A stretch of 64,000 nucleotides of DNA from Kudoa neothunni (taxonomy: Eukaryota; Animalia; Cnidaria): assembly GCA_964304625.1 (NCBI GenBank), contig OZ199838.1, positions 15,552,929-15,616,928 of the forward strand, read 5' to 3'. Below, piece by piece: positions 16,280 to 60,631 of the stretch. Each line of letters begins with the position of its first letter. Within the stretch, counting starts at the first letter, position 1. The notes beneath the pieces are model-generated. The model saw only the letters and a program-made list of their open reading frames with translations. It was not told where the DNA came from and made no database searches. A program made the translations under genes and the position numbers.

Positions 16280-17260
16280 GGGCACCACCAATTCTGATAT
16301 GGAGGGTATGATTCTGAATGATTGCTGTAGTTTAAGCAGTGTTGGGGCATAATTTCATCTGTCCCTTTCATAATGGCTTCAAATAGTTCTTGGTTCGAAG
16401 TATTTTTATTACGTACAATTGACTTTAACTGATGAAAATATTCCCCAATTGTGTTCAAGAAGGGACTGTAGCGTGGTAGGAAGAAGAGTCTGTGACCGTT
16501 AGTTTCAATTTGTCGCGTAAGTTGGTCAGTTATGTGGAACCTCACGTTGACCATTACCGAGAGAGCATTGTCAACTTCGTTTATGTAAGGATCATGAAAT
16601 AATTTCTCGCGAAATCAAGAGAATATTTCCTGATTTACCGAACCTTTTGCTAGGTGAAATGTCCTTATCTTTCCTGATAATATTGCGTTCATTAGTGTAA
16701 CATTTTTTGAACGGATAAATTTCACTTAAAAGTTTGCTCTAGCTCCTAGTGGTGACCTGCCAAAAGACCTTCACATGGATAGAGAAATCCCAGATTTGTC
16801 AATGTAAACTATGATTGGGTGATTAGGTCTACATTGTGGATATTCCATCACATAACGATATAGCTTTAATTTATTTATTAGAATTAAGGTTACTTTTTCT
16901 TTTTAATATAACATGTTAATTTCTAGTGATTGTAACAAATGATGTTATTTTAAAATAATAATGGAAGTGAATTAGGAAGTTTTTAACTATTTGCTTAGTA
17001 ACTTGAATATTATGTATTTCTTTGAGTTTTTGTGCAATCATCATATACAAAATTTATAATGAATACTGTATGCACATCGGATAATTTTGATGGTCGATTA
17101 CCACCTTCTTATTGATTGAGAAAACACCTTCCTGATGTCGTCTTAAAATTCGTCTAGTCGTTGATTTGTGAACACCCATGAACTCAGTTATGTACTCGTT
17201 TGTACATTTGTAGGACATTTCACAAGAAATCAAACGAAAATTAATTACTTTTTCTAAATT
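16280..17260 (-). mobile_element. Degenerate Tc1/mariner (IS630-like, DDE_3) transposase
   Basis: HRLFFLPRYSPFLNTIGEYFHQLK (YSPxLNPIE motif) and VYIDKSG near 16800; multiple stops. Confidence 0.8.
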
Positions 17261-17564
17261 AACAACTTTAATTCACATGTCCGTAGGTAATATCACATAT
17301 TTCCGTTTATTTGTGTTATTTTGATTATGATTGGATAAGGGTGTATTTTGATACAACAATAATGTATTTTTAATTAAAAAAATTCATAAAACAATTGATT
17401 ACATTTTGATATGCACAAGTCATCGATTATGTGCCCAGGATGCATTTTGATTTTGGAATACAGTAAGTACATTCTTTTATGTATTTATGTTATGATTATG
17501 TCATTCAATTCAATTAAAATTGACTATTTTTACATATTTCGGAAATTACGAACACGTCATCGAC

Positions 17565-18124
17565 CTTATATAGCCCCTATGTATCGTATCTGTCTATCAA
17601 ATAACTTTTATAGATTATTCTGCACGTATGAATATGACCTTCCACATGAGCTCTAATGTTTTGCGACTATTTATATTTAGTCCAATTTTTATGTATTATT
17701 CTCTCCCAAATTAGGTTATAAGAGGATATAAAGTCCGCTCATCATTCATAAATAATGAAACAGTAGAATCAAGCAAAGCCTTGTTATCATTGGTCGAGAT
17801 GACATTTTAAGAGTTACTGGTATATCTGAGGCAAGTAGACAAATTTCCGAACAATAATATCAACAGACTTATCGATTGAATAAATTGTGTCGATGCATTT
17901 TTATGTTCTAAATACATTTCATAAAGGTGGAAAACAACGTCGGACAAATCCGTGTCGTAACATCTCAGCGTAGAGAGCTCGCACGTCATTGAGGGACGTA
18001 TCGGTAGATTCACCAAAGTGTAGGGAATCATTTGCGATTAAAATTTCCAAAATATAAACTGACAAAAAAAACAAAAAAGCAAAGGCACAGACAGACGGGA
18101 TTTGAACCCGTGATCTTCGGTTTA
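17565..18124 (-). mobile_element. 5' relic of an older related non-LTR element, starting with a 3'-half tRNA-Thr
   Basis: 17892-18124 is near-identical to 23768-23997. Beyond that it is diverged and frameshifted but homologous to the large ORF (IDKSVDIIVRKFVYLPQIYQ*, NVISTNDNKALLDSTVSLFMNDE, LELMWKVI, DRQIRYIGAI). Confidence 0.9.
18083..18124 (-). pseudogene. 3' half of tRNA-Thr (anticodon loop 3' side to acceptor stem) with a 4-bp duplication
   Basis: Minus strand TAAACCGAAGATCACGGGTTCAAATCCCGTCTGTCTGTGCCT; the 5' half is absent. Confidence 0.9.
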
Positions 18125-18324
18125 AAATACAACATATCGATCTGTAGATCAAGAAAAATAATTGTTATTATATGACTAAAACTGATATTATGTTTTGCAA
18201 ATTTTGGTGGATTTTGGTAGTTGGATTTTTCTTGCGTTATTGGGGATGAAAATTGCATGGAGTTTGATGGATATTAGGATGGAAAATATGGAAATTAATG
18301 CACTCAATGATGGACAACAGCAGA

Positions 18325-21300
18325 CTATACGTGATTATTCCAAACAAGTCTGGAATCCTCAAGCACAGAATGCGTGATGTCCTTCATGAGGCGTCTTCGG
18401 ACTTTGGTGTTTTTCAATAGGCAAAACTTGTGAAGGTTCTCCATTGTAGACGGGTGATGACTACCGAGGGCGCCAAAAATTAGAGAGGAGCGGAGTACAC
18501 CCCATCCTCTTTCTTCCAGAGCACGTCCCTCGGGAGCATACTTCTCCATTTTGTGGCGAGAAACTTCATTCAGTCGATCCATTCCATTCTCATAAGTGAT
18601 ACTTACCTCAATTACATGGATCGACAAGGTTTTGTAGTTGATTAATAAGATATCAGGGCGGCGCTTTGAGATGTGTTCAGGGAGGGGGAAGGAATGTCCT
18701 TTCTCCAGAACCCAGTATTGTTTGGCCTGATTCTTCTTTCCATCGAGTGCCTTTTGGATTTGTTCCGCCACAAGTTGGACGACGTGGTTATGTCGAAGAG
18801 TGCGTAACTTTTCGCCACGTTTGCATCCGCCTATCACATGCCCCAAGGTTTCAACGCCACAGGGACAGTGACGGCAGATTGCGTCCGGAGCCATTTTTGC
18901 GCGGAACATTTGCGATTTCGTCGATAAGATATTCAGCCGAGCCATAATTGCGAAACGATAGGTGCTCAACTTGACATCGCACTTACGGAGCCAATTGTTT
19001 GAAGGAGAGAACCAACTAAAACAGTCAATACACTTACCTTGTTCGATTTGGTTTTGCCAGCTTTCAAGGTGGGATTGTTGGATGTGCCAGCGCAAATGGC
19101 GAATTCGGGTTGGTTTAATTGATCGTTGTTGGTTGACATTTTGGGGTTTTTTCAAAAATTCATCATCGAGGTCGAGTAGGATGGAATTGGAGTTGTTCTC
19201 ATCAATGTGCTCAATGAGTGGGATTTTCATGAATTTACGATGGATTCGAATAGAGGACAATAATGAGCGAACGTCGTGAATTTTCCCGAGTTCGGTCTCA
19301 AGATTGACATAATCGAGGACAGATTTTGAATTTTTGGTTCTGAAATCGACGATCTTCTGGATGGATTGGGCAGCAATATGGCGGACTTTATCATCGTTGG
19401 AGTTGAGAATATTCAGACCCATTGCGAGACGAAGAGCAGTGTAGTCTTGACGAATACTTCTTAACCCAAGACCTCCCAAGAGTATAGGCACATAAAAGAA
19501 GTGAAGGGAACTAGTGTGTGGAATGTTAAGCCATTTCCTAACGCATCGAAGAATTAGTTGATCAGTTTTGATGATTTGCTTTATTTTTAAACTGTGGTTT
19601 CGCAGACTAAACTCTAACGTTGGGTACAAGTAAGTTTTTAAGAGTTCAGTCTTTTGGAATGGCAAAAGTGGGGAATTGGTTAATTTGATCAATTTAGTTT
19701 GGAATTCTTCGAATGGTTTGGGGAGATTTTTGAAGGATTCAAGATTACTCATAACACCCAAGTATTTGTAGTAATCTGTCAGTGGTAAAATTGGTTTATT
19801 ATCGACTTTTAATGGGTTTATTCGATCAAGAGAGGGATCATTGATAGTTCGCTTCTTGTTTTTGAATGTGATGGTAAATTTTGAGCATTTGGTGTGATTA
19901 AGTTCCATTTGTAAATTGGATAGGTAGTTCTTTACTATGTATAGCAAACGGCACATTTCTGATTGGGAATTTGCAATTAGAACCAAATCATCAGCAAACG
20001 CTTGAATACTTATCTTTCCATCGTGTAATTTGTAACCAAATTGTGAGTTATTGATTTTATCCAGTAGTTCATCGATGCACATATTGAATAACATGGGAGA
20101 CAATGGGCAACCTTGTCTAACACCACGTTCATTCATGGGAATTTTAACAGATTGGCCAAGACTATCCGAAATGATGTTGTAGCTTTTGGAATAAAGATTG
20201 GAGATGAATTGTTGTAGATTTTGTGGAAAGGAGAATTTATTCATAACGTCTTTGATTGCATAGTGAGGCACAGAGTCGAATGCTTTGGTTAAATCAAGCC
20301 AAACTATACATGCATCGTCGCCGTTTCTACGAGATGAGTCCAGGATTTCCTGAAGTACAAATGAATGCTCAGCACATCCATCGCTTGATGTAAATCCTTT
20401 TTGAGAGGGTGAAAGTTCAATGGAGCTTCTGATTTTGTAATTGACCACCGACATAAACAGACGATAAATTGTTTGAGTTATTGATATTGGTCGGTAAGAT
20501 AGGGGATCACTGTGTGTTGGATTATCAGATTTGGGTAACAGTACTAGTCTACTTTCCAGCCATTCATTAGGTGGAGTGTTTGATTGAAGTATTTTGTTGT
20601 AGATCGCTGTGAGAATGTAATCAGATTTAGGTAGTACTTTCCAGAAACGCACTGAAATTCCATCAGTTCCGGCGGTTGTATCGGTTTTTGCTCTATTAAG
20701 AGCAACACTGACTTCTTCAGTATTTATAGAAAACACTTCATCATAATCATCCGGGTTATAGTATGGAGTATTTGCGTTCTTATGTTTTTTGGATAAAGAT
20801 ATAGATTGTTGGGAATTTTGTGAGTCTTGTGATTTTGGTTGGGAGGGTACATTTGGAATATTTGGCCGTCTCTTCTTTATCTTTTCATTTTGTTTAGGAA
20901 TTTGAAAGTCAGAATCGACAGATTGTGATGATTGGGTAGGAACCAGGCCCACATTTGGTTTATTGGAGTTTCTCATAGACGCAGGAGGAGGCAGATTAAA
21001 CGCATCATAGATTTCCTTTGCTGTAGCAGTACACCACTCGGGCTTTTTCTCAGTTACTTCTCTGAAGCAACGCTTTGGGTTCAATCGGTATAAAGCTCTC
21101 AATCGTTTAATCGCCTTTTTATCAAGTGTATGATTTGATTGTGAAATAGAGGATTGTTTCGGTGTATTCTTCAGTGGTTGAGAGGCGGCTTTTTCATTAT
21201 CAGGTTGACCAATATAAATTGATTCTGGAGTTGGCTGTGAATTTGAATGGGCTGGAAATCTTTGATTAATATTTGGAATGTTTTCATTTGAGACATTGGA

Positions 21301-23907
21301 TTTTGGTTTGTAGATAGGTACATAGTAGTAACCTAGTTTCTTGGCATGGATTTTTGCAAGAGCAATAAATTTCTCGTATAATGAATTAATATCCAAAGAG
21401 TTATTCTCATTAATCAATTTTATCAGCTGGTCTGACGCTATCTTGAGTTTTTCCATTCTCTCCGCTTTTTGGCGTTTTTGTTTGGCAGGGTAAGTTTCAT
21501 CTTCTTGGATTTCATTAACTGCTTCTTCGATAGGATCAGTTAAATGAGGAACATTAGCGATTTTGGGGATTCCCTGTTTCTTGGGTATTTTATTAGTTGC
21601 ATCATTGTTGGATGTGATAATATTCGGGTTTTTAGGGACTTGCTTATTAGAGGAATCTTCAATAGTGATTTTTGTGACTCCTGTTGCTTTGATTGAGTTT
21701 GATTTAGCTTGCAACAAAAAGTCAGCAATTTCTTGAGAATTGATTGATTGGGAATCGATAATTTTATCGTTATTGATATTTTTAGGTAGATTTTTAGTGG
21801 TAGTTGAATTTGAATTATTATCATAGGATGCCTTAGGATTCAGTTTGGAAATGGGCATTGGAAAGTCAAGCGTGGAAAAACCTTGGGAAGTTAATACATT
21901 TAATTGTTTTGGAGGATTGTCTTCAACGGGATCTTCGAGCGTGGAGAAATAGGCTGTCTCATCCAGTATTTTAACGTCTTGCAATTTCGGTGGAGATAAT
22001 GGCGGTGGATTTTCAAACAGAAATTGTATATCTGTAGATTGGTATTTGTTTTGATCATCAGTATGTTCTAGATTTTCAACATTAGCCTCATCCAGCAAGA
22101 TAATTGATTCCTCTTCTAATATGGCTTCATTTAATGAGATTTCATTACAGCTAATATCTCCCTCGGAGTCTTTTGGAAGTAGAATTGTCATATCACAATC
22201 CTCAATGTTCCTGTTCATAGCTTCGTTAAGAAATTGAATAAATTTAGCGTGATCAGCATCAAATATTTCTTGAGAGTTGTTAAAGAAATTATTTAGCTCC
22301 TGATTCTGATTAATGCCAATCCAATTTTCATTTTCATCTTCATTAATATTGATCTCATATGGGTCCTGGTTAGTAGATTGTGCATTAGAGTTTTCATTAA
22401 TGTTTGGTGTCTCAATATTTTTAATCTCATTTATTGTTGCTTCTAACTCAAGTTTATTACGCTCGAAATCAGCCCACCACTTATTCTCAGCGTTACGCTT
22501 ATCATTTGCATCTGCATTACTATTTGCGCTAGTATCAGTTAAAATTTGATTTAGCTTGGGTTGGTTCTTATAGTTTGAATTAACTGTATCAATTGCATTG
22601 TTATTTATTGGAGAAGTAGATGTTATATTAACAGTAGGTGGTACGACGCTGTTGTCATTTTTATTTGTTGCGTCATCATCATCAATTATGATATTATTTG
22701 TAGAGTTTCCTATTGATAATGTCGGATTATACGGTTGTATGATAGTTTTCGATAGATTAGTTGATGCAACAAAGTTCTTTAAACAATCGCTTGGCAAAAT
22801 GTTAGAAGCATACTGGTGCAACAATGCAATAAATGTAGGTTCGGGGTTGTCATCATCAAAGGTGGATTTATATTCACTCGGAATATTTGTAGTAGGTTGG
22901 TTAGATTGATGAGGAGATTTGTTAGTTAATTTTCCCACGAGTTGCGCTGATAAAGGATTACCTGCTTTGTGAGTATTGTGGAGGAGAGTAGTTGTTTCAA
23001 TTGGTTGATCCTCTTTTAATGTAGGATTGTCAACAACTGTGTTAGTTTCGGTAGGAGATATTGCCAAGTCCAATGAGTTGTGTAGAATAACTTGTGTATC
23101 ACATGAAAAATTATCGAGATTATCATCAATATTTTTATTATCAGTTGAATTAATTGATGTATCATGAGTTGAAGTGGCAATAACAGGTAATCCGTTTTCA
23201 TTAGAGATATCCGCCATGGTTGTTTTCGGTGACTCGTCAGTGTTAGTTGGTTGGATTTGATGTCGGTTTGTTGTTGGAAGGATCGAAGAAACTGAGGGTT
23301 CATGGAGGGTGTAATTTCCAGAGTCATATTCGTTAGAATAGATGGAGATAACTTGAGTTATTTTAATACTCAGGTTGGCACGGATTAAGGAAATTGGAAA
23401 TTTTCGTTTGTTTAAATCATCAATAATGTTCTTTTTCAAGTCATCAATAGCCTCCTTGTAACGTTCCCGTCTGTCTAGTACCACTTTTGTTGGCTTTTTC
23501 GAGCTTCGAGAAATGACCATCCACATGAGCTTCAAAGAAACGACAATTTCTATTGGTTCCTGTTCAGATTTTTCATGGAAATTTGGATCAAACATAGAGT
23601 ATGTGGTGTTCTCATCGTTCATATAAAGGGCAATGGTATTGTCAACCAACTTTTGATTATTTTCAGTTGATAAAATATTTAGAAAGAGTTGCTGGTAACT
23701 CTGGAACAAGTACAGAAACTTCCTCACAAAGTTGGCGATAGACTTATCGACAAGAGAAAGTTGTACAGATGCATGTTTATGTTCTAAATACATTTCATAA
23801 AGGTGGAAAACAACGTCGGACAAATCCGTGTCGTAACATCTCAGCGTAGAGAGCTCGCACGTCATTGAGGGACGTATCGGTAGATTCACCAAAGTGTAGG
23901 GAATCAT
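18325..23907 (-). CDS. Retrotransposon polyprotein: long N-terminal region, reverse transcriptase, CCHC knuckle and PD-(D/E)xK restriction-like endonuclease (1860 aa)
   Basis: RT motifs AGTDGI, YRPISIT, QKGF, WLDLTKAFDSVPH, GVRQGCPLSPMLF, AFADDLV and YKYLGV; CRHC..ETLGHVIGGC; RHNHVV; RRPDILL..IEVSI..KMEKY. LYRLNPKRCFREV and SPLLPFQK resemble NeSL/Utopia elements. Confidence 0.97.
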   Translation of the reverse strand: MIPYTLVNLPIRPSMTCELSTLRCYDTDLSDVVFHLYEMYLEHKHASVQLSLVDKSIANFVRKFLYLFQSYQQLFLNILSTENNQKLVDNTIALYMNDENTTYSMFDPNFHEKSEQEPIEIVVSLKLMWMVISRSSKKPTKVVLDRRERYKEAIDDLKKNIIDDLNKRKFPISLIRANLSIKITQVISIYSNEYDSGNYTLHEPSVSSILPTTNRHQIQPTNTDESPKTTMADISNENGLPVIATSTHDTSINSTDNKNIDDNLDNFSCDTQVILHNSLDLAISPTETNTVVDNPTLKEDQPIETTTLLHNTHKAGNPLSAQLVGKLTNKSPHQSNQPTTNIPSEYKSTFDDDNPEPTFIALLHQYASNILPSDCLKNFVASTNLSKTIIQPYNPTLSIGNSTNNIIIDDDDATNKNDNSVVPPTVNITSTSPINNNAIDTVNSNYKNQPKLNQILTDTSANSNADANDKRNAENKWWADFERNKLELEATINEIKNIETPNINENSNAQSTNQDPYEININEDENENWIGINQNQELNNFFNNSQEIFDADHAKFIQFLNEAMNRNIEDCDMTILLPKDSEGDISCNEISLNEAILEEESIILLDEANVENLEHTDDQNKYQSTDIQFLFENPPPLSPPKLQDVKILDETAYFSTLEDPVEDNPPKQLNVLTSQGFSTLDFPMPISKLNPKASYDNNSNSTTTKNLPKNINNDKIIDSQSINSQEIADFLLQAKSNSIKATGVTKITIEDSSNKQVPKNPNIITSNNDATNKIPKKQGIPKIANVPHLTDPIEEAVNEIQEDETYPAKQKRQKAERMEKLKIASDQLIKLINENNSLDINSLYEKFIALAKIHAKKLGYYYVPIYKPKSNVSNENIPNINQRFPAHSNSQPTPESIYIGQPDNEKAASQPLKNTPKQSSISQSNHTLDKKAIKRLRALYRLNPKRCFREVTEKKPEWCTATAKEIYDAFNLPPPASMRNSNKPNVGLVPTQSSQSVDSDFQIPKQNEKIKKRRPNIPNVPSQPKSQDSQNSQQSISLSKKHKNANTPYYNPDDYDEVFSINTEEVSVALNRAKTDTTAGTDGISVRFWKVLPKSDYILTAIYNKILQSNTPPNEWLESRLVLLPKSDNPTHSDPLSYRPISITQTIYRLFMSVVNYKIRSSIELSPSQKGFTSSDGCAEHSFVLQEILDSSRRNGDDACIVWLDLTKAFDSVPHYAIKDVMNKFSFPQNLQQFISNLYSKSYNIISDSLGQSVKIPMNERGVRQGCPLSPMLFNMCIDELLDKINNSQFGYKLHDGKISIQAFADDLVLIANSQSEMCRLLYIVKNYLSNLQMELNHTKCSKFTITFKNKKRTINDPSLDRINPLKVDNKPILPLTDYYKYLGVMSNLESFKNLPKPFEEFQTKLIKLTNSPLLPFQKTELLKTYLYPTLEFSLRNHSLKIKQIIKTDQLILRCVRKWLNIPHTSSLHFFYVPILLGGLGLRSIRQDYTALRLAMGLNILNSNDDKVRHIAAQSIQKIVDFRTKNSKSVLDYVNLETELGKIHDVRSLLSSIRIHRKFMKIPLIEHIDENNSNSILLDLDDEFLKKPQNVNQQRSIKPTRIRHLRWHIQQSHLESWQNQIEQGKCIDCFSWFSPSNNWLRKCDVKLSTYRFAIMARLNILSTKSQMFRAKMAPDAICRHCPCGVETLGHVIGGCKRGEKLRTLRHNHVVQLVAEQIQKALDGKKNQAKQYWVLEKGHSFPLPEHISKRRPDILLINYKTLSIHVIEVSITYENGMDRLNEVSRHKMEKYAPEGRALEERGWGVLRSSLIFGALGSHHPSTMENLHKFCLLKNTKVRRRLMKDITHSVLEDSRLVWNNHV

Positions 23908-23939
23908 TTGCGATTAAAATTTCCAAAATATAAACTGAC

Positions 23940-23955
23940 AAAAAAAAACAAAAAA
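23940..23955 (-). terminator. Pol III terminator T-tracts downstream of tRNA-Thr
   Basis: T6 and T9 runs just 3' of the tRNA on the minus strand; duplicated near 18064-18078. Confidence 0.8.
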
Positions 23956-23959
23956 GCAA

Positions 23960-24032
23960 AGGCACAGACGGGATTTGAACCCGTGATCTTCGGTTTACAA
24001 GACCGACGCCGTAACCACTTGGCCACTGCGCC
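23960..24032 (-). tRNA. tRNA-Thr (anticodon TGT)
   Basis: GGCGCAG TG GCC AAGTGGTTAC GGC G TCGGT CTTGTAA ACCGA AGATC ACGGG TTCAAAT CCCGT CTGTGCC T forms a full cloverleaf with intact A and B boxes. Confidence 0.97.
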
Positions 24033-27000
24033 ATTAATCACGTAAAATGTGTTTGTTAGACATATACAAATATTTGTATTTGATAAATTATCAACAAACA
24101 ACACCACATCACTTTGTTCAATTTATGAATAAAAGGAAATAAAAAAACAAGAATAATTTATTTTCTTCATTTTACTTGATTTTACTTGATTTTATCCAAT
24201 TTTTCTTCTTTTTTGTTTTCTATATTGATTCATTCAAGGAAAACTAATAAAATCCAATGTTTAATGATCAGAACTATTTATGATCTTTTTACATATATTA
24301 TCATCTCTCGATGAAATATTTAAAAAAACGAATGAAATTATCTCATCATATGAATCCGATCGGGCAATTTGATAAGAAAGAATTTCGCAAAGGGTAAAGA
24401 TTTTGATACAGATGTCTAAGTTTATGATTGGATGAATTTGATGAGTTCAAATAATGTTGGATTAACGACCAGCGATATTATTTGATTCTCTAATTTCATT
24501 ACGTTCTCGAATAATAGAAAAACAATTAAAATATATGATTAGTTTAAGGGTTTCATGGCGAATCGACACTGTCAATAATGCAACAATTGACGAGTGGAAA
24601 ACTACGTTATGCAATATTATAAAATGTTATTCCCCCCAATATACATTTAATTTGGACGAAGCATTCTACTTTCAGTAGCAACTTGGTATTATTGTTAAAA
24701 TTTAGAACATAGTTACATGCACTAACTCTGTTTTTTCGTATTTATTTCTTTATTATCAATAAAAGTAAGCAAGAAAAATAAACATATGACAGCGAATTTT
24801 GGGTGCCTCTCATTACCCCTATAACTCGTTATTTTACAAAGTAACAAAAGCCTGAAATTTATATTTGGAAGAAATTGGTTTAATGACTAGAAAAATATAT
24901 TTTGTAAAAATTAATATTACTTCCATCGTATCTTTCGGAATTAAAATGGTTTTTGCGGTTTTCATAACAATTTTTTATCCATCATCTAATAGCTTCTATA
25001 GCTCTGTGGTGAAGCAAATGTTCCTTCTATTCATACACGGACTTTTGTTGAACATTTATAAAAGATTCCTGACATATACTAAACACCGAGTCCAAAAACA
25101 CGTGAAAATTAATCGAAAAGCCCGCGAAATTATCCGAAATATCTGGAGGTTCATAACTTAGACCGGTGTTTCCCTACACGGGATGCCCCCACCACCTAGG
25201 GGTGTGATGGCCACAATTAGGGATATAGGAGTGATTCCATATGTTAGAGTAAATTTATAAATATATCATAATCTCTTGCGTATTTTTTGTTAGTCCTCGT
25301 TCAAATCATGTATGGAGGTAATGTGCGTAATAATATTTTTGGGTATTTTGTTATCAGTATATTTCAATTCGAAAAATTCGATATGAAACTTATTTAATTT
25401 TAATAGTTTATTTTATATGATTTTGTGAATTATCGCAATAGAGGAATAGTTTGTATTAACCTATTCAGTATATATAATTTCAGATGGTATATTTTCTTGC
25501 AAAGTTGTAACTTTTTTATCTTATAATATCATAACATATTTATACATTTATGCTCTGAATAGGTTGTCAACATATTTCATTATTAGGAAATAGTCTATAA
25601 TTTTAGAAATAAAACGATGAAGGCGCGATTTTGATTTTATCCACTTTTAAAATTGTACATCCATCATTTAATTATATCGTACTTGTTGGTTTATATTTAA
25701 AGTTTTGAGGTCGACCTTGTAGCTTATCTTTGACATGAATGTTAGCTAATTTATCCCGATAAAAATTCTCTTTTAATTTTGGTACAATGAAGAACGAACC
25801 ATTCATTTATACACTTAAATAAGTTATTGCTAGGTTCACAGTTTATATATTAGTTTGTTTATTCAAATACGTTTAAAAACATATTTTGGGATTTGTTAAA
25901 TTTTTATTAATTTATTTCATTAAAATTAAATTTATAATCTAATTCAACGTAGAATAAGAATGTCGATACGTCTATTTAGCATAAGATAACAAATGAAATG
26001 CAGTTCTAGTCTTTATTATATACAATACAAAAACAGCATCTGAATTCATTGAACCCCTCACAACGATTTTCGTATATCACTGAGCAACAATGAGCCACAC
26101 TTTGAATTGCTTACCAAAAACCAACGGGAGCAAAAATTTCATCAGATAAAATAAATATTAATATATATTATCTGTGTAATTTATGAATAATTTGTTTTCC
26201 CTATAATTAAAGACGATAATTAAGATATTATAATATATATTTTTATGATTTCGTATCACTTTTTAAAGAAATTATTTCGACTAATGTTCTTGAGATGTTT
26301 TAAAAACATTTTTGAGTTCACATAAAAATAATGTTTATAGACAAGGTTAAGTAATAGCTGTAATCGTGGAGTTATGAGACAGGTAAAGATAATATTTTAT
26401 CTTCCTAAATGGTGCGTAATAAATTGGATTGATTAAATAAGTTTTTATTTAAATTTATACATTTTTTAAATAATTATAAAAGTTCATAATTTAGAATACT
26501 AAATAAAATCATAAATGGTATAATATAGAGTCTTTTTTCATTGAGATTATCTTTACGCATATATAGAAAAAATATACTTCGGGTGAAAAGTCAAACCTTG
26601 ACTTTCAACTGAAAAAGGGGTGCAAAATGAGCGTTAAGGTTAGCTAGGGGATACGTATGTAAAATATGTAGGGAAGCACTAGTCTATTTGAACCAAATAA
26701 AATGTTGCTTACAATATTCTAAAAATCTAATTGTTAACCCCTGGGGATTTTTGACCAACTACGAGTTCTACTGTAATGTATAAAAAATTTGTTAATTTAA
26801 GGAAATTATGGCATTCGTGCAATTTTTTATTGATTTCCTGCGTACATATAAATTTTGATAAAATCTAAATCTTAGATCCACTGCAGGATTATAATAAAAA
26901 AGTTAGTAGATTCTTACATCTCAAAGAAGCATGATCTCGTTTCGTAACGTTAAATAAATTTTTTAATTTAATTATATCAGCTTTCTGTAGTGTATTGCAT

Positions 27001-33400: not shown

Positions 33401-35814
33401 ATCCTTAAAGTATATTTGTATTTTTATTATTTTTTATAATGAATAAGATTATTTAGTTTATTACTCATGGGATGATATTCACCATCGATGGATGTTTAAC
33501 TAAATTTTCCGACGTTTTTATTATTTTTCAATGGTTGATATCCTTACTGCATATTATGAACGTAAAAGTCCTTCAAGAAATTCAGTATTTCAAAAACGTT
33601 TTCATGAGTAATTAAAAATTGCATAGGTATATAGATTTGGAAATCTATCCCGGGAAGTTTCATCTTGTTATTATGAGGAGTAACTTTGGTTATCTGGTGG
33701 AGGTTTTGCGAAGTTTAAGACCTTTGGTTATGCTTGCCTCCTCCAAACCGCTGTCTAAAGTTATCAAACGTTTTTTGAAATCGTGGAAAGCTTATTTGGG
33801 GAGTTTTGCATTCACTCTGCTTATTATAATGTCGTTTTCTTATTACGGATTGTTGGCTTACGGTAACTTGATCATTTGTAACAACCCACAAACATCCAGA
33901 AACTCTCACTGTGAAGGAATTCAAAATATAACTGTCGACACAAACACATACTCTAGTGATTTAAAAGCTATGATAACTAATTGGATGACAAGTAATCAAA
34001 TTTATTTTAGATATAAAGGAATGGAATTTACCTTCATTTTACGTGCCAAAAGCGACCGTATCATTTAAATACCTAAATTTCGAAACGTACCTTGAATCAG
34101 TTATCACCTCCACTATTATACTTACTATGGAATCTTGGTCAAAATTGGAAACGCTGTTATCTTTACTAAAAGGAGAACAATCCATATTTTCTCCTTTGAT
34201 GCTATATTTGGTTGTATGTCAGTTTCTTGGATTGCCTTTGCTTGGAGCTGTCGTGGTAAGTGAATACAACAAAGCTTCGTATCATCGCTTGCAATCCAAC
34301 AACGCCCAACTATGGGACCAAATATCCAATCAAATCCGACTAGCCACCCCCAAGAAAAATATTGCCAGGTAAAATCACGTAAAACTATCTATTAGATTGA
34401 GACCTTTTTATTCATACAGACTTGAACAAACAAATCCCATAAGAATTTATTGTTATATTTTCTATAAATCTGTTTACTATCGAATATTCTTAACAATGAT
34501 GTACGGATTTAATATTTTATGCTATCTTCCTGGTTTTAACAAGCTGTATGATCAGAATAAACATGCCAAATCTGTACTCTACATAGTAATAAGAAATATA
34601 CATGGATTTTTGAGAAATTTTTATTTTTTAGATATTGCATGGTTTTATCGCTTGGAAATGGATTGATTGTATTGTGGCGATTGTTGTGGATGGCTACTAT
34701 GAATGTTTCAGGAAAGCCCTGAAAATTATTCAATTTATCGTGGCCTCAATTGGAGTGGTTGATGTTGTAATATATCGATACACAAAACAACCCGAATTTA
34801 TCAAAGGGATAATACTGGTATCTGCTTTTCATTTTGTGTGTGTTCTTCTGCAGTGGAAATCCATTCGTAGCATTAGCAAAACAATATTGGTGAGTGTTCT
34901 AGTTAGTTTTAAGGAGTTTGTCGTTTTGATGACCATCAACATGAGTTATTTGGCTGTCGGTGTGAAATTGTTCGGTACAACACGTTTCACACATATCACA
35001 AACAATTTGATCAATTTCCAAACTGCCTACAACGGAATTTCAGTGCTCTTTCTGACAATGGCCAATCAAGACTGGTCTGAACTTATGAGAGGGTTTATGG
35101 TTTCCTATCCACAATGCAGTGAGTTCACAATATCTGTCAATTCGGCATCCTTTCATTATTCTGAGTGTTCCAATAATACAATTGTTATGATCTATTTTGT
35201 TAGTTATTACGTATCCAACTATTAATATATTATTTCTTTAATTAATCCACTTTAAGATTGTAACAAATATTATTTTGGTCAACCTGTTAATTGGAATTAC
35301 CCTGTCCAAACTATCCTTGCCATTAATATTCAACAGAAACCAATCCAAACAGTTCAATTTCAGCTATTACGATATTCGGATACTCAAAAATATTTGGTCT
35401 AACTTACAGCCTAGGGGTTCTCATTATATTATGTTGAGTAAAGCCAACCTTATGGTCAACATTTACATGTTGTGGAAAACTAACAACAATTGGTCAAATA
35501 TTATCCATAGCAATGTAATTCTAATAACAATTTATAGAATTTAATTAATAGCTCAGATAATTAAATTAAAACTAAAGAAATTATCAATTTTGACGAGAGA
35601 CAGTCGTTTGGAAAATTCAAAAAGAATTGTGAGTTTCCACCACGTCCTGCACACCATAGCGAGTTATATGGTTGCGAACGTTGCAGATAACTCGTTTCAA
35701 AATGAAATATCTCGTCATTCGAAGAATGAATATTTCGATCTAAAAAGATTGGTTTGTTCTCAAGTGTTAACTGACTGGTTTAGAAAACTGAGATATTCTA
35801 CTAATGATTTATAA
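30474..35814 (+). CDS. NALCN: Highly divergent four-repeat NALCN-like cation leak channel (multi-exon)
   Basis: CVVNFVCVCYGTP, ANLESRAED, IPLRLRIY, LRSLRPL...LSKVIKRF, NFQTAYNGISVLFLTMANQDW...MVSYPQC, SYYDIRILKNIWS and VSFHHVL align in order with NALCN landmarks (VCMNTP, DNLELDED, LPLRLRIF, LRCLRPL, GEDW..MVQPPFC, SYNDLRHFQIIW, VTFHDVL). Confidence 0.8.
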
Positions 35815-44162: not shown

Positions 44163-47100
44163 TCTCCCGAGCGGTTGTGGGGTCCAATCGACCTCAATGG
44201 ATGTTTGAATCAATTTCAGAGAATTTTATAATACATCATTAAATTTAATGTCATATGAATTCTCTTGATAACATTATTTCTATTAAAATATTATAGAAAA
44301 TTGTAAATCGTGAATTAAATTCATAGCATAATCCTAATACTTGCATACACTTTCTTTTGAGGTCCAAAGGATTCCGCTTTTTTTGCCAGACAAGCCATCA
44401 AATAATCTGCAACAATTTTGAGGCTTAAATAAAGATTTACCGGGAGGAAGAAGGTATAAATTTAATAATAACACGAACGTTGAATACCGGTCATTACCTA
44501 CGAGGGAGTAATGTTTCTTAGAATGATTATGAATGTTAGTTTCGACTGATTTTCAGTCCGATTGTAATAAAGTTTATGTTAATCTTTGAGGGGTTGATTA
44601 GTCGTATTATTACGTTTTTAATGAAGATAATAATAGTGTTATTTGGTCTTCTGAGCAATCTCAAATATTTAAAAACCCTAAATAATATAATAAATATGAA
44701 AATATATAATAAATATGAAAATATATAATAAATATGAAAATATATAATAAATATGAAAATATATAATAAATATGAAAATATATAATAAATATGAAAATAT
44801 ATAATAAATATATAATAAATATGAAAATATATAATAAATATGAAAATATATAATAAATATAAAAATATATAATAAATATAAAAATATATAATAAATATGA
44901 AAATATATAATAAATATAAAAATATATAATAAATATGAAAATATATAATAAATATGAAAATATATAATAAATATGAAAATATATATGAAAATATATAATA
45001 AATATGAAAATATATAATAAATATAAAAATATATAATAAATATAAAATATATAATAAATATAAAAATATATAATAAATATAAAAATATATAATAAATATG
45101 AAAATATATAATAAATATGAAAATATATAATAAATATAAAAATATATAATAAATATGAAAATATATAATAAATATGAAAATATATAATAAATATGAAAAT
45201 ATATATGAAAATATATAATAAATATGAAAATATATAATAAATATGAAAATATATAATAAATATAAAAATATATAATAAATATGAAAATATATAATAAATA
45301 TAAAAATATATAATAAATATAAAAATATATAATAAATATGAAAATATATAATAAATATGAAAATATATAATAAATATAAAAATATATAATAAATATAAAA
45401 ATATATAATAAATATGAAAATATATATGAAAATATATAATAAATATGAAAATATATAATAAATATGAAAATATATAATAAATATAAAAATATATAATAAA
45501 TATGAAAATATATAATAAATATAAAAATATATAATAAATATAAAAATATATAATAAATATAAAAATATATAATAAATATATAATAAATATGAAAATATAT
45601 ATGAAAATATATAATAAATATGAAAATATATAATAAATATGAAAATATTCAGGTATAACTTCTTACGCTTCAAGCATAATCATTTCCTTAGTTAACACAT
45701 TCTTCATATTTTAATTTGAGACTTTTTTCTCAAATATTAACAACTTATTCAATTTTTAATCAACATAATTATTAAAAATATTTGACAAACAAAGAGTTAT
45801 TGGCTGATTTGGTAATCTTTTCCTATATGTCCTATTTTCAAATCAAAATCAGAATCTCTCAAATTGCTTTAAGTGTTGAAAACTGAAGGAATATTCTTCG
45901 AAAGATACTTTCATTAAAAAGATTTATTCAAAATTTGAGGGTTATTCATATTGATGATTTCGAAATGAGGGAAACTCGAAGAATCATGGATGAATTTTTC
46001 CAATTCGCCATATTTTTAAGAGTGGAAAATTGTTTTTCCAAACTTCTTATTTTGATGAGAATTTAAAAATTAAAGGGCAACTAGTTACTTTTGGAGAAAA
46101 ATGACCCCTTTAAGCAATATATGCGGTCAAAGCCAGCAGTGTGCAGAATTAACGTTTTTTCCCTCTACCGATCCCAAAACCAAGTCTATTCATATTTCGG
46201 TGTATATGAGTAAAATTTACAATGAACCGTCAGAAAATGTTAGGAAAGATATTTTTCTGGAGCGTTTGTGAGAATTAAAGGAAAGAGGGAGTAATACTAT
46301 TTGAAATAATTTCATCACGTCTGATCACCTTTCCCAAAAACTCTATTCGAGGAATGACAATGACTGTAACAATCCGAAATAATCAAAGAGATATTCCGGA
46401 ATATTCAAAAACGAATCCAAAACAGAAAGTTTTCGGCAACAAAAATTTTTTATAACAAAAACTAATAATCTCCTATGTTTATAAAAATAGTAACGCAGTT
46501 TTACTACCAACAACATCCTGTTTCAATACAAATGTTGAAGACACAGACCGAAAAATAACTGTGGTTATCCTGGGAATTCATCGTTATAAAACTGTTTTCT
46601 GTGATCAAAAATGTTTAATAATTAAGTTTCTAGAAGATCTTGCAAATAGGTTGACGAAGGATTATGCTCAGAGAAACACAAATCATGTTTATCAAAGTCA
46701 TATTCGCATCTACGAATTCCTTCGTTGTATGAGTAGATGCAGTTGCTGTTCAGGATCTTGAGACAAAAAATAGTTCTCTTTTTTGTTTTTGGACCAAACT
46801 GTCGTGAAAACTATTCAAAAGTTGTTTACATTATATATTCTAACAATAACTACTAAAATAATATAAATATATTCATATCTTGTTCTTTTTGAAACTTTGT
46901 GATTATGAGGTTTTTATGTGACATGATCACTAAGAAATTAATTAAAAAAGAAATGAAATTTAATGCTTTATTTAACTTTTGAATTGTTTCGACAATTATA
47001 GTAAACAGCCGGCAATATTATATTTTTGATATTTTTAAATATTTTATTGATATTTTTCTCTCATAATTTATTAAACTATTAATTAAATTTTTTCGTAATT

Positions 47101-47569: not shown

Positions 47570-48642
47570 TTAATCAACTTTAATACATTTGTGATTATAG
47601 AAAAATTCGTCAAATACAAGTTGATCATGTTTTCTTATTCCATGCATAAAAAAGAATGGTATTTTTTTCCTAACTAACTCAAAGCCTTTGGGTAAATTTG
47701 AATTGTAGATTGATTTAGAGCCGTAGTATTGATTATTTTTCATGGTTGTATTACAAAACTGTAACAGGTAACCAATGTTAGCATCACCGTTTTTTATATT
47801 TTCACGAGAACGAGAGGTTGAAACCAAACAATTCAATTTGGAAGATTTAATAAAGTATCCACCACCAGAACAATAAGGAGGGAAGAACCTGCTTGAAATA
47901 GCGTTTGATGGTTCGTAATTCTTGTGTCTTTTATCCCTTATGATCTTCATTCCTACATGTCTAAACACAAAATGTACAATTAATTATTTTTCTGTAATAC
48001 TCCACGTCAATATTACAGCAATCCTTCGTAATCCACGTTAGTATTTATCATACTTTTCAGATATTTTAGATATTTGGTTATTGAAACATAAATATCATCA
48101 TCTGTCTTTACAATATATTTCAAAGAAGTTTTATTTACCGAATTTATTTCCTTTAGAGATGCTATGAGTTTCGCCCCAACATTGGAATATTTTTCCTGTA
48201 TATTGTTATGTATAAGAAGATCATTATACAGTCGATTTTCGTGTTTAGTTCGATTTGATATTTTTTCGTTTTTGTATCCAACTTGAAAATATACCACATA
48301 AGACATAGTATCAGAAAATCTTTTCCATGAATAATGAGACCATACTGCACGAATGGCACATCTTGAATCGTAATCATCAACTTTTGAGTCTACCAGTATT
48401 ATAACTTCAGGATCGTATATCACTATTGGAGAGAGGTCATGAGAGATGAAATTTGGAATCATGTTCAAACATTCAGAATATTTCTCCTTAGCATTGAAAA
48501 AATACATTCGGCCATCGACTCTTTGAGTTAAGGATGTTTTCCAATAATCAATTTGGATCATTCTGGGATGTGTATACAGAATAATCAATACTGTCACTAT
48601 AAGCAATACAAAAAAAGCAAATTTCTTTTTTTCATTACGCAT
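47570..48642 (-). CDS. GT31 beta-1,3-galactosyltransferase-like glycosyltransferase (2 exons, intron ~47962-48016)
   Basis: N-terminal signal anchor, RCAIRAVW, KTDDDIYV and PPYCSGGGY. Confidence 0.9.
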
Positions 48643-57200: not shown

Positions 57201-57370
57201 ATTTTCTATCAACTATATTCAATAATGTTGGTGGTAAGTTGAAAATTTTCCTAAATAACTTGCCTTCCTTTACACTACCTGTTGGAGCTGCCACTTTTGC
57301 CATTATTGTCGTCGTTATTATTGTTTTATTTAAATTTCTTCCTTGTATTTTCTCAAACAAATCTAAATAA
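54290..57370 (+). CDS. HAP2: HAP2/GCS1 class II gamete fusogen (multi-exon)
   Basis: Signal peptide; VNGNPYE...CSD...ATCG; SQGICCRC..RG...C...TAHCLRMSTLWYRVYSI; DLSGNTCNKIGVQFAAFQSQ...C..NQP; C-terminal TM and short tail. Confidence 0.93.
54686..55307. mobile_element. Non-autonomous hAT (Charlie-type) element in HAP2 intron 2
   Basis: TAGGGGTTCTCAAC ... GTTGAAAACCCCTG inverted ends; degenerate 8-bp flanks ATGTAGAC / ATTTAGGA. Confidence 0.65.
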
Positions 57371-58034
57371 CTACTTGTTAAATATTATTTATATAATTTG
57401 TTTATTTTGTTATTTTCTTGCATTAAGCTTATTTTGTCGTTATGATGACGTAAATGAAAAATATAATAGGGTTTTGAATTATGATCTTTCAATATAATAT
57501 TTATTAATTGTTATACATACTTTTTGACATAAAAATGTTGTGTTGTAAGAAATGAAATAAAATTATTTATGAGCTTAAATAAATTTATTTAATCTGTAGT
57601 TACTTTTTTAACTTTAGTAATATTTTTTTGATGAACATTATATAAGCTATACATTTTTTTTAATTAACATATTTTGGAATATGTGATATTTTAATCATGC
57701 TGAATGTAAATTAAAGTTTTGTCTGAAGGAATGTATGAATGTATACATAATTCGATGTTTTGCTATGAGATTATATATCAATTATTTTCTACAATTTTTT
57801 AGGCATAATTAAATATTAATAGATTTACTGTGTGTAAATTGTTCGATAATATTTATCGAAAATCTAAGCGAAATATTCGAATTAAAAAAACCGTTAAAAA
57901 TAGCTCGTTTTATGATCAATGAATAATACTATTGATTTATTACTTGTACTTAGAAACATCGGCGTATTATTTATTTAGGATGTTCTCAATTAAATATTAG
58001 TATTTGCGAATCTCATTTATTATAGTTGACAAAA

Positions 58035-59469: not shown

Positions 59470-59647
59470 CACTGAGATATGTTTTTTCTCAATATTTACT
59501 TTAATCCAGTATAATTGATTAAATTCATATTATATTTACTTTAAAATAATGACTTTTGTTTAGCCAATACTACAAAATTAATAATATAGGTTTTCCTGAT
59601 CAATGTGAAATTTTTTATGAAATAAATGGGAGGTTTATTAAATAAAA

Positions 59648-59967
59648 TTGAGTTTTATCATTAAGATATTTGCCACAAATAAATTTATACCTAAACTAAC
59701 ACTTACACTAATCAACACTTCGACTCCTGCAAATGATGACTTCAAACAAATAATACTAAAAATCAACAAATTAACAAAAGGAAAAAATAAAACAAATCAT
59801 TTTCTATCAACTGTATTCAATTATGTAGGCGGTAAGTCGGAAAGTACCCTTAATAACCTACCCCTTTTACATTCATTGTTGGAGCTGCCACTCTAGTCAT
59901 AATTGCTATCGGTATTATTTTTTACTTTAAATTTATTCCTTTTATTTTCTCAAACAAATATATATGA
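59648..59967 (+). pseudogene. Relic of the last HAP2 exon (frameshifted)
   Basis: FIPKLT..INTSTPANDD...NHFLSTVFNYVGGK..LNNLP matches HAP2 57026-57370. Confidence 0.9.
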
Positions 59968-60631
59968 GTATTTGTTAAATATTATTTATATAAATGTTTA
60001 TATTCCATTATTTTTTTGCGTTATGCGTACGTTGTCGTTATGATTATGAAAATTTAAAAAATGTAATGAAATTTAGAATTATCGCAGATGTTTCGTCCCA
60101 TTTTAATTTTAAATAAAAAATTTTATGTTATAAGGAATGAACTAAAATAATGTCTGACTTTAAATCAGTTTATTTTAATCTGTATTCAATTTAATAATTT
60201 TATTCAATTTTTAAATTTGGAAGGACATTACATAAGTTATAAATTGATTTAAAATTAACATATTTTGAGATAAGTGATATTATATTCATACTGATTGGGA
60301 ATTACAGTTTTGTCAGAAAGAATGTATGAATGTATACATAATTCGATGTTTAGCTATGGGATTATAATATTGCAAATATTTTCCACAATTTTTTAGGCAT
60401 AATTAAATTTTGATGGATTTATTAAAGGTAAATTGTTCGATTATATTTATCGAAAATCTAAGTGAAATATTGGAATTAAAAAAACTGTTAAAAAATAGCT
60501 CATTTTATGGCCAATGAATAATACTATTGATTTATTACTTGTATTTAGAAACATCGGCGTATTATTTCTTTATCGACTTTCCCAATTAAATATTATTATT
60601 TGTGAATCTCATTTATTATAGTTGACAAAAA

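What the first reader, a model, noticed from the sequence alone, without database searches (positions are those of the whole stretch)
17565..24032. Intact RLE retrotransposon inserted in the tRNA-Thr anticodon loop with a complete tRNA restored upstream (self-regenerating target)
Seen in sequence (minus strand): complete tRNA-Thr(TGT) at 24032-23960, then T-tract, then an intact 1860-aa RT-CCHC-RLE ORF, then a 3' UTR ending ...ATGTTGTATTT. This joins directly to TAAACCGAAGATC..., the same tRNA resuming at the last anticodon base, followed by the 5' end of an older related element. The break therefore lies in the anticodon loop, yet no tRNA gene is lost. Established: RLE-bearing non-LTR elements (R2, R4, NeSL, Utopia) are often site-specific for multicopy RNA genes and usually disrupt the target copy. 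Some tRNA-associated RLE families have been described, so novelty needs checking. Inference: this family targets tRNA-Thr and rebuilds the tRNA 3' half plus terminator at its 5' junction, like attP-mediated tRNA reconstitution by phages. That would allow harmless, repeated head-to-tail insertion. An intact site-specific TPRT enzyme with a non-rDNA target would also interest genome-insertion work.
Basis: partly seen in the sequence, partly recalled or inferred. Interest (0 to 1): 0.93.

Follow-up and report, generated by a model that had tools for sequence, protein, structure and literature searches.

The report
Retrotransposon that rebuilds its tRNA-Thr target
An apparently intact R2-like jumping gene sits inside this small animal genome's only detectable tRNA-Thr(UGU) gene, yet a complete tRNA gene stands in front of it; it is one of a lineage occupying 16 of the 38 detected tRNA genes here, a way of colonising essential single-copy genes that I did not find described.

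Summary
On the minus strand lie a complete tRNA-Thr(UGU) gene, a double T-tract, an uninterrupted 1860-aa ORF (RT, CCHC, restriction-like endonuclease) and a 200-nt 3' UTR. The tRNA then resumes at nt 36-39, followed by the 5' 0.5 kb of a second, diverged element.

16 of 20 clusters of related reverse transcriptases in this 40-Mb genome have a complete same-strand tRNA gene at their head. 16 of the 38 detected tRNA genes are occupied, and nearly all isoacceptors are single-copy. Every 3' junction examined meets its tRNA at nt 36-40. Older, decayed units mostly lie further from the tRNA.

The lineage forms its own clade among RLE elements. It lacks detectable zinc-finger or Myb domains and has a lineage-restricted N-terminal domain. 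The same layout occurs in two other public assemblies.

It is still open whether the rebuilt 3' part travels in the element's RNA (favoured, about 0.6) or is a long target-site duplication (about 0.25). At the Thr locus itself a roughly 220-nt block without substitutions shows a sharp crossover.

The scan had already noted this phenomenon at other tRNA genes of this genome. I found no published description.

The parts
23960..24032 (-). Complete tRNA-Thr(UGU) gene at the head of the stack. It is the only Thr(UGU) gene detected in the genome.
   Evidence: ARAGORN; Rfam RF00005 70.9 bits; genome-wide DNA and Rfam searches; all 38 detected tRNAs typed
23939..23959 (-). Double T-tract directly after the tRNA, presumably the Pol III terminator. 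A pattern of this type follows 15 of 16 occupied tRNA genes.
   Evidence: Sequence; comparison of occupied and unoccupied tRNA genes, (Fisher p = 0.0025)
23908..23938 (-). Short 5' UTR. There is no ATG between the tRNA break point and the ORF start.
18325..23907 (-). Single uninterrupted ORF of 1860 aa encoding the retrotransposon protein.
23413..23868 (-). Conserved N-terminal helical domain (aa 14-165), shared by all sister families and restricted to this lineage. Function unknown; it is a candidate target- or RNA-binding module.
   Evidence: Thr against Ser 38% identity; alignment A1; AlphaFold2 pLDDT 80; no fold match; only 2 hits in 1.84 billion representatives
21493..23412 (-). Low-complexity, Asn/Ser/Thr-rich linker (aa 166-805), not conserved between families.
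19756..20526 (-). Reverse transcriptase domain (Pfam RVT_1, aa 1128-1384, with the FADD motif).
   Evidence: best solved relatives are R2 proteins at E 1e-61
18400..19080 (-). C-terminal CCHC zinc knuckle and PD-(D/E)xK restriction-like endonuclease (aa about 1610-1836).
   Evidence: Residue-by-residue alignment to R2 proteins 9nl3 and 9dou, E about 1e-11
18125..18324 (-). 3' UTR. It holds a small hairpin at 18137-18152 and ends in the family's conserved terminal TTGTAT motif (18127-18132).
18083..18124 (-). Displaced, non-functional 3' part of tRNA-Thr (from nt 36-39 to 73) with a 4-nt duplication. This is the 3' junction, taken as the site of the first-strand nick.
   Evidence: (D20)
17900..18082 (-). 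T-tract, leader and first 44 codons of the remnant, without substitutions relative to 23776-23959 of the intact element.
   Evidence: Alignment A2; repeat D12
17600..17899 (-). Diverged remainder of the remnant (about 60% nt identity; aa 1-143 overall 52%). It is the 5' fragment of another, probably older, subfamily.
   Evidence: tblastn

Best explanation
This is a young, probably active member of a lineage of R2-like non-LTR retrotransposons (one ORF: lineage-specific N-terminal domain, RT, CCHC, restriction-like endonuclease). Each family of the lineage is tied to one tRNA gene.

Shown: the element's 3' end is joined to the tRNA at the 3' edge of the anticodon loop (nt 36-40, most simply 38/39). 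This is the expected footprint of a first-strand nick followed by target-primed reverse transcription. Also shown: a complete tRNA followed by a double T-tract lies directly upstream, and the old 3' part of the tRNA is left behind the element. The head tRNA therefore stays an intact target and can be hit again. In the Gln array the degenerate copies lie at the tail, and here the intact element lies next to the tRNA, consistent with new copies entering at the head.

Inferred: the element's RNA starts inside or upstream of the tRNA 3' part, so it carries that part and its own Pol III terminator. After reverse transcription the end of the cDNA pairs with the homologous target strand. Second-strand synthesis is primed there, with a crossover point that varies. 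This resembles the R2Bm 5' junction, which uses 27 nt of 28S sequence kept on its RNA. At the Thr locus the crossover lay about 220 nt in, within the 5' end of an older resident element, which gives the intact copy a chimeric 5' end.

My odds: site-specific insertion with target regeneration, about 0.9. The 3' part being RNA-borne, about 0.6.
For: Anatomy.

Genome-wide rule:
- 16 of 20 RT clusters are headed by a complete same-strand tRNA 1.8-5.1 kb upstream of the first RT match.
- Heads were read directly for Thr, Ser, Gln, Lys, Trp and Asn and for ten more tRNAs.
- Junctions fall at nt 36-40 in every family examined.
- The tRNA set is minimal, with a single Thr(UGU) gene.

For an RNA-borne 3' part:
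- In the Gln array the leaders of units 3 and 8 differ from their neighbours' leaders from tRNA nt about 69 onward, and they carry a different terminator. Their acceptor-stem variants still pair with the 5' strand. A plain duplication of the target cannot give this.
- In the Lys(UUU) array the leader type goes with the RT family of the unit that follows it.
- In contig L039, from another data set, two successive leaders differ immediately after the discriminator base.
- The duplicated tRNA part is about 35 nt in most tRNAs but about 44 nt in tRNA-Ser, and always ends at the tRNA end.
- A double T-tract follows 15 of 16 occupied tRNAs against 4 of 11 unoccupied.
- The ORF start is the first ATG counted from the tRNA break in 8 leaders (87-206 nt). 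In both Lys families the ATG inside the tRNA T-arm is in frame and open into the ORF. In one of them the conserved N-terminal helices lie upstream of the next in-frame ATG.

For recent activity: the ORF is intact, the 220-nt block has no substitutions, and a second sample carries an allele with 11 synonymous against 6 non-synonymous differences plus loss of the stop codon.

Precedents for the 5'-junction model: PMC6895275.
Against: - No RNA data: three RNA runs carrying the same species label held no reads of this stretch, so the 5' end of the transcript is unknown.
- No promoter that would start transcription inside a tRNA gene is known, and Rfam finds no ribozyme.
- A Pol II transcript that contains tRNA sequence should be exposed to RNase P and RNase Z.
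- At the Thr locus itself the block without substitutions extends 44 codons into the ORF and ends sharply. Taken alone, this is what a long target-site duplication would look like.
- This family has one copy, so its specificity rests on sister families.
- Leaders in the arrays are mosaics. Unequal crossing-over and gene conversion could therefore have produced part of the leader-family linkage.
- The order of parts in the window is not bridged by independent reads.
Confidence: 0.6

Rival explanations
1. Long target-site duplication. The RNA carries no tRNA sequence. The endonuclease nicks the bottom strand at nt 38/39 and the top strand well downstream, past the tRNA end and sometimes inside the resident element. 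Fill-in then duplicates the tRNA 3' part, the terminator and whatever follows, as in rotifer R9 with its 126-bp duplication.
For: - The Thr locus has a block of about 220 nt without substitutions. It starts exactly at the junction and ends sharply inside the older element's ORF.
- In the Gln array several successive leaders are identical over the first 75-95 nt and then diverge.
- There is a precedent in the R2 clade (R9, cited in PMC6895275).
- No unusual transcription start is needed.
Against: - Gln units 2 and 3 have leaders that differ from the next unit's leader from inside the tRNA onward.
- In L039 two successive terminators differ right after the discriminator base.
- Leader type follows the RT family in the Lys array.
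- The duplicated length would have to track the tRNA's own length (35 against 44 nt).
- The double T-tract is enriched at occupied genes.
- The Lys ORFs open from an ATG inside the tRNA part.
Confidence: 0.25
2. The tRNA piece belongs to the 3' end of each element as a tRNA-derived tail. The elements insert just after intact tRNA genes, between the discriminator base and the terminator, rather than inside them.
For: In a head-to-tail array the phase of the repeat unit cannot be read from the array alone. Other retrotransposons (Dictyostelium TRE, yeast Ty3) target the flanks of Pol III genes; this is my own knowledge, and PMC5391098 appeared.
Against: - Variant tRNA pieces in the Gln array go with the terminator variant that follows them, not with the family of the element in front of them. 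Four units of one family are followed by two kinds of tRNA piece.
- The piece always begins at the anticodon loop-stem border, whatever the tRNA. That fits a nick site better than a tail.
- The displaced Thr piece carries a 4-nt duplication, as a discarded remnant might.
Confidence: 0.05
3. An assembly artefact, or purely recombinational tandem duplication of a single old insertion, with no continuing site-specific transposition.
For: Short-read contigs of the second sample break at the repeat and do not bridge the arrangement. Several units in the Gln array are identical and could be unequal-crossover copies.
Against: - The two Thr copies differ (a 4-nt indel, then about 40% divergence), so they are not a duplicated assembly block.
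- The remnant-specific junction and the 3' junction both exist in another sample's contigs.
- 16 different tRNA genes carry different families, and single arrays hold families with only 43-61% protein identity.
- The same layout occurs in two other public assemblies.
Confidence: 0.02

Closest known systems
R2 (28S rDNA-specific RLE non-LTR retrotransposon; R2Bm, R2Tg)
   Same: One ORF with RT, a C-terminal CCHC and a PD-(D/E)xK endonuclease. R2 proteins are the best solved relatives. Insertion is site-specific, in the same orientation as an RNA gene. The 5' junction probably uses target sequence carried on the RNA, as R2Bm keeps 27 nt of 28S (PMC6895275).
   Different: The target is a tRNA gene, not 28S. 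No N-terminal zinc finger or Myb domain was detected; there is a lineage-restricted helical domain instead. In my tree the lineage forms a separate clade. R2 disables the copy it enters and relies on target multiplicity. Here the target is single-copy and stays whole.
tRNA-specific NeSL-related families: NeSL-1_TV (tRNA-Pro), LIN15_SM (tRNA-Arg), LIN25_SM (tRNA-Glu), from Kojima and Jurka 2015, PMC4640811
   Same: RLE-bearing non-LTR retrotransposons reported as specific for particular tRNA genes.
   Different: The main text I searched gives their targets but says nothing of a regenerated target or of single-copy targets. Their junction figure (S6) was not readable here. I had none of their sequences, so the relationship is untested. 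The Ulp1-bearing (NeSL-architecture) proteins in my sample fall outside this clade.
R9 of bdelloid rotifers (R2 clade, 126-bp target-site duplication)
   Same: A precedent for widely staggered cuts that duplicate a long stretch of the target. This is the mechanism of my main rival explanation.
   Different: R9 sits in multicopy 28S. Nothing I read says the duplication restores a working gene. Known to me only through PMC6895275 and my own memory.
Integrases of phages and integrative elements that insert into tRNA genes and restore the 3' end from attP
   Same: The same outcome: the element brings a replacement for the part of the tRNA gene that it displaces, so the gene survives.
   Different: Those use DNA recombination by tyrosine or serine integrases in bacteria and archaea, with no reverse transcription, and usually a single integration rather than a growing stack. 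The comparison rests on established knowledge (for example PMC8371274, listed).
Dada DNA transposons (PMC8869645)
   Same: They insert inside tRNA genes, several families around the anticodon loop.
   Different: They are DDE DNA transposons, inserted in the opposite orientation. They rely on many gene copies and leave disrupted genes.

Membership tests
RLE-bearing non-LTR retrotransposons (R2 / NeSL / R4 / CRE / HERO group) | Single ORF with a reverse transcriptase followed by a CCHC motif and a PD-(D/E)xK restriction-like endonuclease, and no APE domain | tested here: met
   Pfam RVT_1. The C-terminus aligns to the CCHC and RLE region of R2 proteins at E about 1e-11, with the Cys/His and PD...E...K positions matched. 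No APE hit.
RLE-bearing non-LTR retrotransposons (R2 / NeSL / R4 / CRE / HERO group) | Sequence-specific insertion into a repeated or RNA gene target, with a fixed 3' junction | tested here: met
   3' ends of 8 or more families abut their tRNA at nt 36-40. 16 of 20 RT clusters are headed by a tRNA.
R2 clade in the strict sense | Insertion at the conserved 28S rDNA site | tested here: not met
   The targets are tRNA genes.
R2 clade in the strict sense | N-terminal zinc finger(s) and a Myb domain for target binding | tested here: not met
   No Pfam zinc-finger or Myb hit in aa 1-1099, even at E up to 10. The conserved blocks upstream of the RT show no such motifs. The N-terminal domain has no known fold match. 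A very divergent Myb cannot be ruled out.
R2 clade in the strict sense | RT phylogeny placing it inside R2 | tested here: inconclusive
   The lineage is one clade (SH-aLRT 98) outside the sampled Myb-bearing, Ulp1-bearing and oomycete groups. However, this was a quick tree with no curated Repbase references (R2Bm, R4, NeSL-1, Utopia, CRE, HERO).
NeSL / Utopia clade | N-terminal zinc fingers, often with a Ulp1 protease; RT groups with NeSL-1 or Utopia | tested here: inconclusive
   No Ulp1 or zinc-finger domain. Ulp1-bearing proteins form a separate clade. No named NeSL or Utopia sequences were available.
Target-regenerating integrative elements (functional class, not a homology class) | The element supplies a copy of the displaced part of the target gene, so that an intact gene remains | tested here: met
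   A complete, high-scoring tRNA stands upstream and a truncated copy downstream at the Thr locus and at 15 further tRNA genes. Expression of the head tRNA was not tested.

The most novel reading that the evidence does not exclude
Target choice is set largely by the RNA rather than the protein. The enzyme recognises a generic feature of tRNA genes at the anticodon loop-stem border. The tRNA 3' part carried on the element's own RNA decides which tRNA gene can be entered and rebuilt. Swapping that roughly 35-nt leader would then retarget the element. This would explain why close relatives (61-62% RT identity) sit in Thr, Ser and Lys genes, while unrelated families share one tRNA. It would also give a naturally re-addressable TPRT system that leaves its landing site intact.
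Probability: 0.2. Interest if true: 0.92.

Novelty: new variant of a known kind. Interest (0 to 1): 0.82.

Why it matters
Site-specific LINEs are thought to survive by hitting multicopy targets, so that losing one copy does no harm. Here the targets are essential, mostly single-copy tRNA genes in a genome with only about 38 detected tRNA genes, and the element avoids damage by rebuilding the gene. That is a different solution to the parasite-host conflict, so far associated with prokaryotic integrases.

It also offers natural material for an open question in TPRT: how the 5' junction and second strand are made. The arrays record many junctions with visible crossover points.

For genome-insertion work it offers a set of intact enzymes with non-rDNA targets. 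They have no recognisable zinc-finger or Myb module, and their specificities have switched among at least 16 tRNA genes.

Tried and rejected
- RNA evidence: three RNA runs with the same species label held no reads on the stretch, so this was no test. The label may be that of a host.
- Ribozyme or other known RNA at the 5' end: an Rfam scan at E up to 1 of 17000-24600 found only the tRNA.
- N-terminal domain: no Pfam family, no usable ESM Atlas hit and no Foldseek PDB match at E 0.001 or better.
- Organism: window ORFs give animal-type domains (ion channel, galactosyltransferase, HAP2, Kunitz). A protein search returned one unnamed hit. An earlier scan note names the myxozoan Kudoa neothunni; I could not verify this.
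- Junction figure of the known tRNA-specific NeSL relatives: not held as text.
The gaps lie inside the ORFs' low-complexity regions.
I reran it from files.
- A MAFFT alignment of 3' ends was not in structural register, so no covariation count was made for the 3' hairpin; only single folds were run.
- Relatives at 26-29% identity (L040, L041) have no tRNA flanks and were set aside.
- Literature searches for a tRNA-regenerating retrotransposon found none. The library does not cover most subscription journals or Repbase Reports.
Full report
**What is in the window.**
- On the minus strand ARAGORN finds a single tRNA, tRNA-Thr(tgt), at 23960-24032. Rfam scores it at 70.9 bits, the best tRNA score in the genome.
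- It is followed by two T-runs (23939-23959) and a 31-nt 5' UTR.
- An ORF then runs from 23907 to 18325 and is open for 1860 codons.
- Pfam places RVT_1 at aa 1128-1384. The best solved relatives are R2 proteins (9nl3, 9dou, 8gh6; E 1e-61 to 1e-43).
- The C-terminal 230 residues align to the R2 CCHC knuckle and PD-(D/E)xK nuclease with the key positions matched.
- The 200-nt 3' UTR ends at 18125. From 18124 the sequence is the tRNA again, from T36 at the earliest.
- After this displaced tRNA part (18083-18124, with a 4-nt duplication) come the same T-runs and leader and a fragment matching aa 1-143 of the ORF (17600-18031, 52% identity).

**A detail at the Thr locus.** Alignment A2 shows that the intact element and the remnant have no substitutions from the junction through the terminator, the 5' UTR and the first 44 codons. 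The only differences are a 4-nt and a 1-nt indel (head 23776-23997, remnant 17900-18124). At 23775/17899 identity falls abruptly to about 60%. The intact copy therefore has a 5' end that was recently copied from, or exchanged with, a resident element of another subfamily. The remnant is a 5' fragment, which is unusual for a LINE. I have no explanation for that beyond later deletion.

**The genome-wide rule.**
- The window lies in a 40-Mb assembly of four contigs. The RT-RLE part finds 68 matches there, which fall into 20 clusters.
- 16 of these clusters have a complete tRNA gene on the same strand 1.8-5.1 kb upstream of the first RT match. One of the other four is probably the tail of a headed array.
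- I read the heads directly: Thr(tgt), Ser(aga), Gln(ttg), Lys(ttt), Trp(cca) and Asn(gtt). Ten more followed: Cys, Phe, Val(cac), Val(aac), Lys(ctt), Ile(aat), Thr(agt), Gln(ctg), Gly(tcc) and Met.
- Rfam detects only 38 tRNA genes. Typing all of them shows one gene per isoacceptor almost throughout, and a single Thr(tgt). The count is a lower bound, because only the best candidates were scored.
- In every family whose 3' end I examined, the 3' UTR ends in a TTGTAT-containing tail and the tRNA resumes at nt 36-40. The border between the anticodon loop and the 3' stem strand (38/39) fits most cases.
- In the Gln array the degenerate copies lie at the tail, and at the Thr locus the intact element lies next to the tRNA. 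This fits repeated entry at the head.

**Who they are.**
- In a quick maximum-likelihood tree of the RT-RLE region (43 rows, 743 columns), all families of this genome plus two proteins from an ENA assembly form one clade (SH-aLRT 98). It lies outside the sampled Myb-bearing R2-like, Ulp1-bearing NeSL-like and oomycete groups. No curated references were available, so the name of the clade stays open.
- Thr, Ser and one Lys(ttt) family are each other's closest relatives (61-62% identity). The second Lys(ttt) family groups elsewhere. The Gln families group with a protein from another data set.
- Targets are therefore sometimes kept across species and sometimes switched between close relatives.
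- The protein has two conserved parts, aa 14-165 and aa 806-1860, separated by a low-complexity linker.
- The N-terminal part is a helical domain present in all families. It has no Pfam, Atlas or PDB counterpart. A profile of it finds only two proteins among 1.84 billion representatives.
- No zinc finger or Myb was detected.

**Other data sets.**
- Contig L039 (ENA ERZ795007, GC 44%) begins with a tRNA 3' part, a terminator and a leader. It holds a 1596-aa ORF and ends with the 3' UTR, the same tRNA 3' part and a different leader.
- Scaffold L067 (ENA ERZ28624939) has a complete tRNA-Ser(cga) followed directly by a leader and an ORF with the N-terminal domain.
- Contigs of run X1, a different sample from the assembly (20 substitutions and a 9-nt deletion in the last 1.9 kb, none in the other 3.7 kb), hold the Thr element and its junction k-mers.
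- Of the coding differences, 11 are synonymous and 6 are not, and the stop codon becomes Gln. This suggests the copies diverged under selection for function.

**How the tRNA is rebuilt.** Two models give the same final structure.

*Model A:* the RNA carries the tRNA 3' part and a terminator at its 5' end. Evidence for A:
- In the Gln array the leaders of units 3 and 8 differ from their neighbours' leaders from tRNA nt about 69 onward and have another terminator. Their acceptor-stem variants (A instead of G at two positions) still pair with the T residues of the 5' strand. They were therefore compatible with a working tRNA when they stood at the head.
- In the Lys(ttt) array the leader type goes with the RT family of the unit behind it.
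- In L039 two successive leaders differ right after the discriminator base.
- The duplicated tRNA part is about 35 nt in most tRNAs and about 44 nt in tRNA-Ser, and always ends at the tRNA end.
- A double T-tract within 28 nt follows 15 of 16 occupied tRNAs and 4 of 11 unoccupied ones (Fisher p = 0.0025).
- In eight leaders there is no ATG between the tRNA break and the ORF start (87-206 nt). In both Lys families the ATG inside the T-arm is in frame and open into the ORF.

*Model B:* the cuts are staggered and the stretch between them is duplicated, as in R9. Evidence for B:
- The 220-nt block at the Thr locus.
- The runs of identical leader starts in the Gln array.

The two models can be joined. 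With tRNA sequence on the RNA, the cDNA end can pair with the target strand downstream of the nick. The second strand is then primed wherever homology ends. That gives mosaic leaders and, when a related element already sits there, a crossover far inside it. This follows the four-way-junction model proposed for R2 and its extension to elements with duplications (PMC6895275).

I put A (with variable crossover) at about 0.6 and pure B at about 0.25. A third reading, in which the tRNA piece is a 3' tail of elements that insert after the tRNA, is disfavoured. Variant pieces go with the terminator behind them, not with the element in front.

**What is not known.**
- The 5' end of the RNA, its promoter, and how a transcript that contains tRNA sequence would escape tRNA processing.
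- Whether the head tRNA is expressed.
- Which part of the protein or RNA reads the target.
- The organism. The domains found are animal-type. An earlier scan note says Kudoa neothunni, which I could not check.

**Comparison with the literature.**
- tRNA-specific RLE families are on record (NeSL-1_TV, LIN15_SM, LIN25_SM; PMC4640811).
- Dada DNA transposons enter tRNA genes near the anticodon loop but leave them broken (PMC8869645).
- R2 keeps upstream target sequence on its RNA, and R9 makes a 126-bp duplication (PMC6895275).
- A 2026 survey of R2 diversity names no tRNA targets (its text holds no 'tRNA'; passages read).
- Seven full-text searches found no retrotransposon that regenerates a tRNA target or lives in single-copy tRNA genes.
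- The same phenomenon was already noted by this scan at other tRNA genes of this genome. I re-tested the Gln, Lys(ttt), Trp and Asn heads and junctions, and the Cys and Lys(ctt) heads only.

**Verdict.** It is a new variant of a known kind (a site-specific RLE LINE), and the target-preserving strategy is, as far as I could find, undescribed.

Noticed in passing
window 18137-18152 and the equivalent places in L006, L007, L014, L021, L025: A 4-6 bp hairpin lies 13-18 nt before the element's 3' end in 6 of 8 families. The stem sequences differ between families, which looks compensatory, and the conserved TTGTAT tail follows. It may be the RT's 3' recognition signal. The single folds are not significant on their own.
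   Followed up: partly
window 18100-24060, run X1: In another sample the k-mer depth of the element's contigs (8.4-8.8) is about 2.5 times that of the flank (3) and the remnant (3.7). This hints at two or three copies there, or a copy-number polymorphism. The 3' 1.9 kb carries 20 substitutions while the other 3.7 kb carries none, including 7 changes within 25 nt (19339-19363) that look like a conversion patch.
   Followed up: partly
about 25-45 nt upstream of the six head tRNA genes read (window about 24060-24075; L038, L042, L043, L045, L046): All six tRNA genes have an upstream motif resembling a TATA box. It is probably part of the native Pol III promoter in this organism.
   Followed up: no
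L050 (tRNA-Arg tct), L054 (tRNA-His), L049 (tRNA-Gly gcc), L047 (tRNA-Val tac): Four tRNA genes with no element behind them still have an element-style double T-tract. They may be former targets from which the elements were lost by recombination between tRNA 3' parts.
   Followed up: no
L068 3540-3600 (ENA ERZ795007 NODE_36): A Gln-type unit whose stop codon runs almost directly into the end of the next unit's 5' UTR, without a 3' UTR or tRNA piece. It is a deleted or recombinant junction.
   Followed up: no
window 57000-64000: Three tandem units of about 2.6 kb (81-94% identity) include an ORF with a Kunitz/BPTI domain (61223-61774). This is a recently duplicated gene cluster.
   Followed up: no
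window 44586-45700: An AT-rich satellite with a 19-nt period and more than 50 copies. The local GC content is 16%.
   Followed up: no
window 33619-35225, 48013-48642, 55489-55974: ORF fragments with Ion_trans, Galactosyl_T and HAP2-GCS1 domains. These are intron-split animal-type genes. The galactosyltransferase has a single unnamed relative at 70% identity in 5.8 billion proteins, so the genome is very divergent.
   Followed up: partly
window 17600-18031: The remnant behind the intact element is a 5' fragment (aa 1-143 only). LINE remnants are normally truncated at the 5' end, so this one is unexplained.
   Followed up: partly
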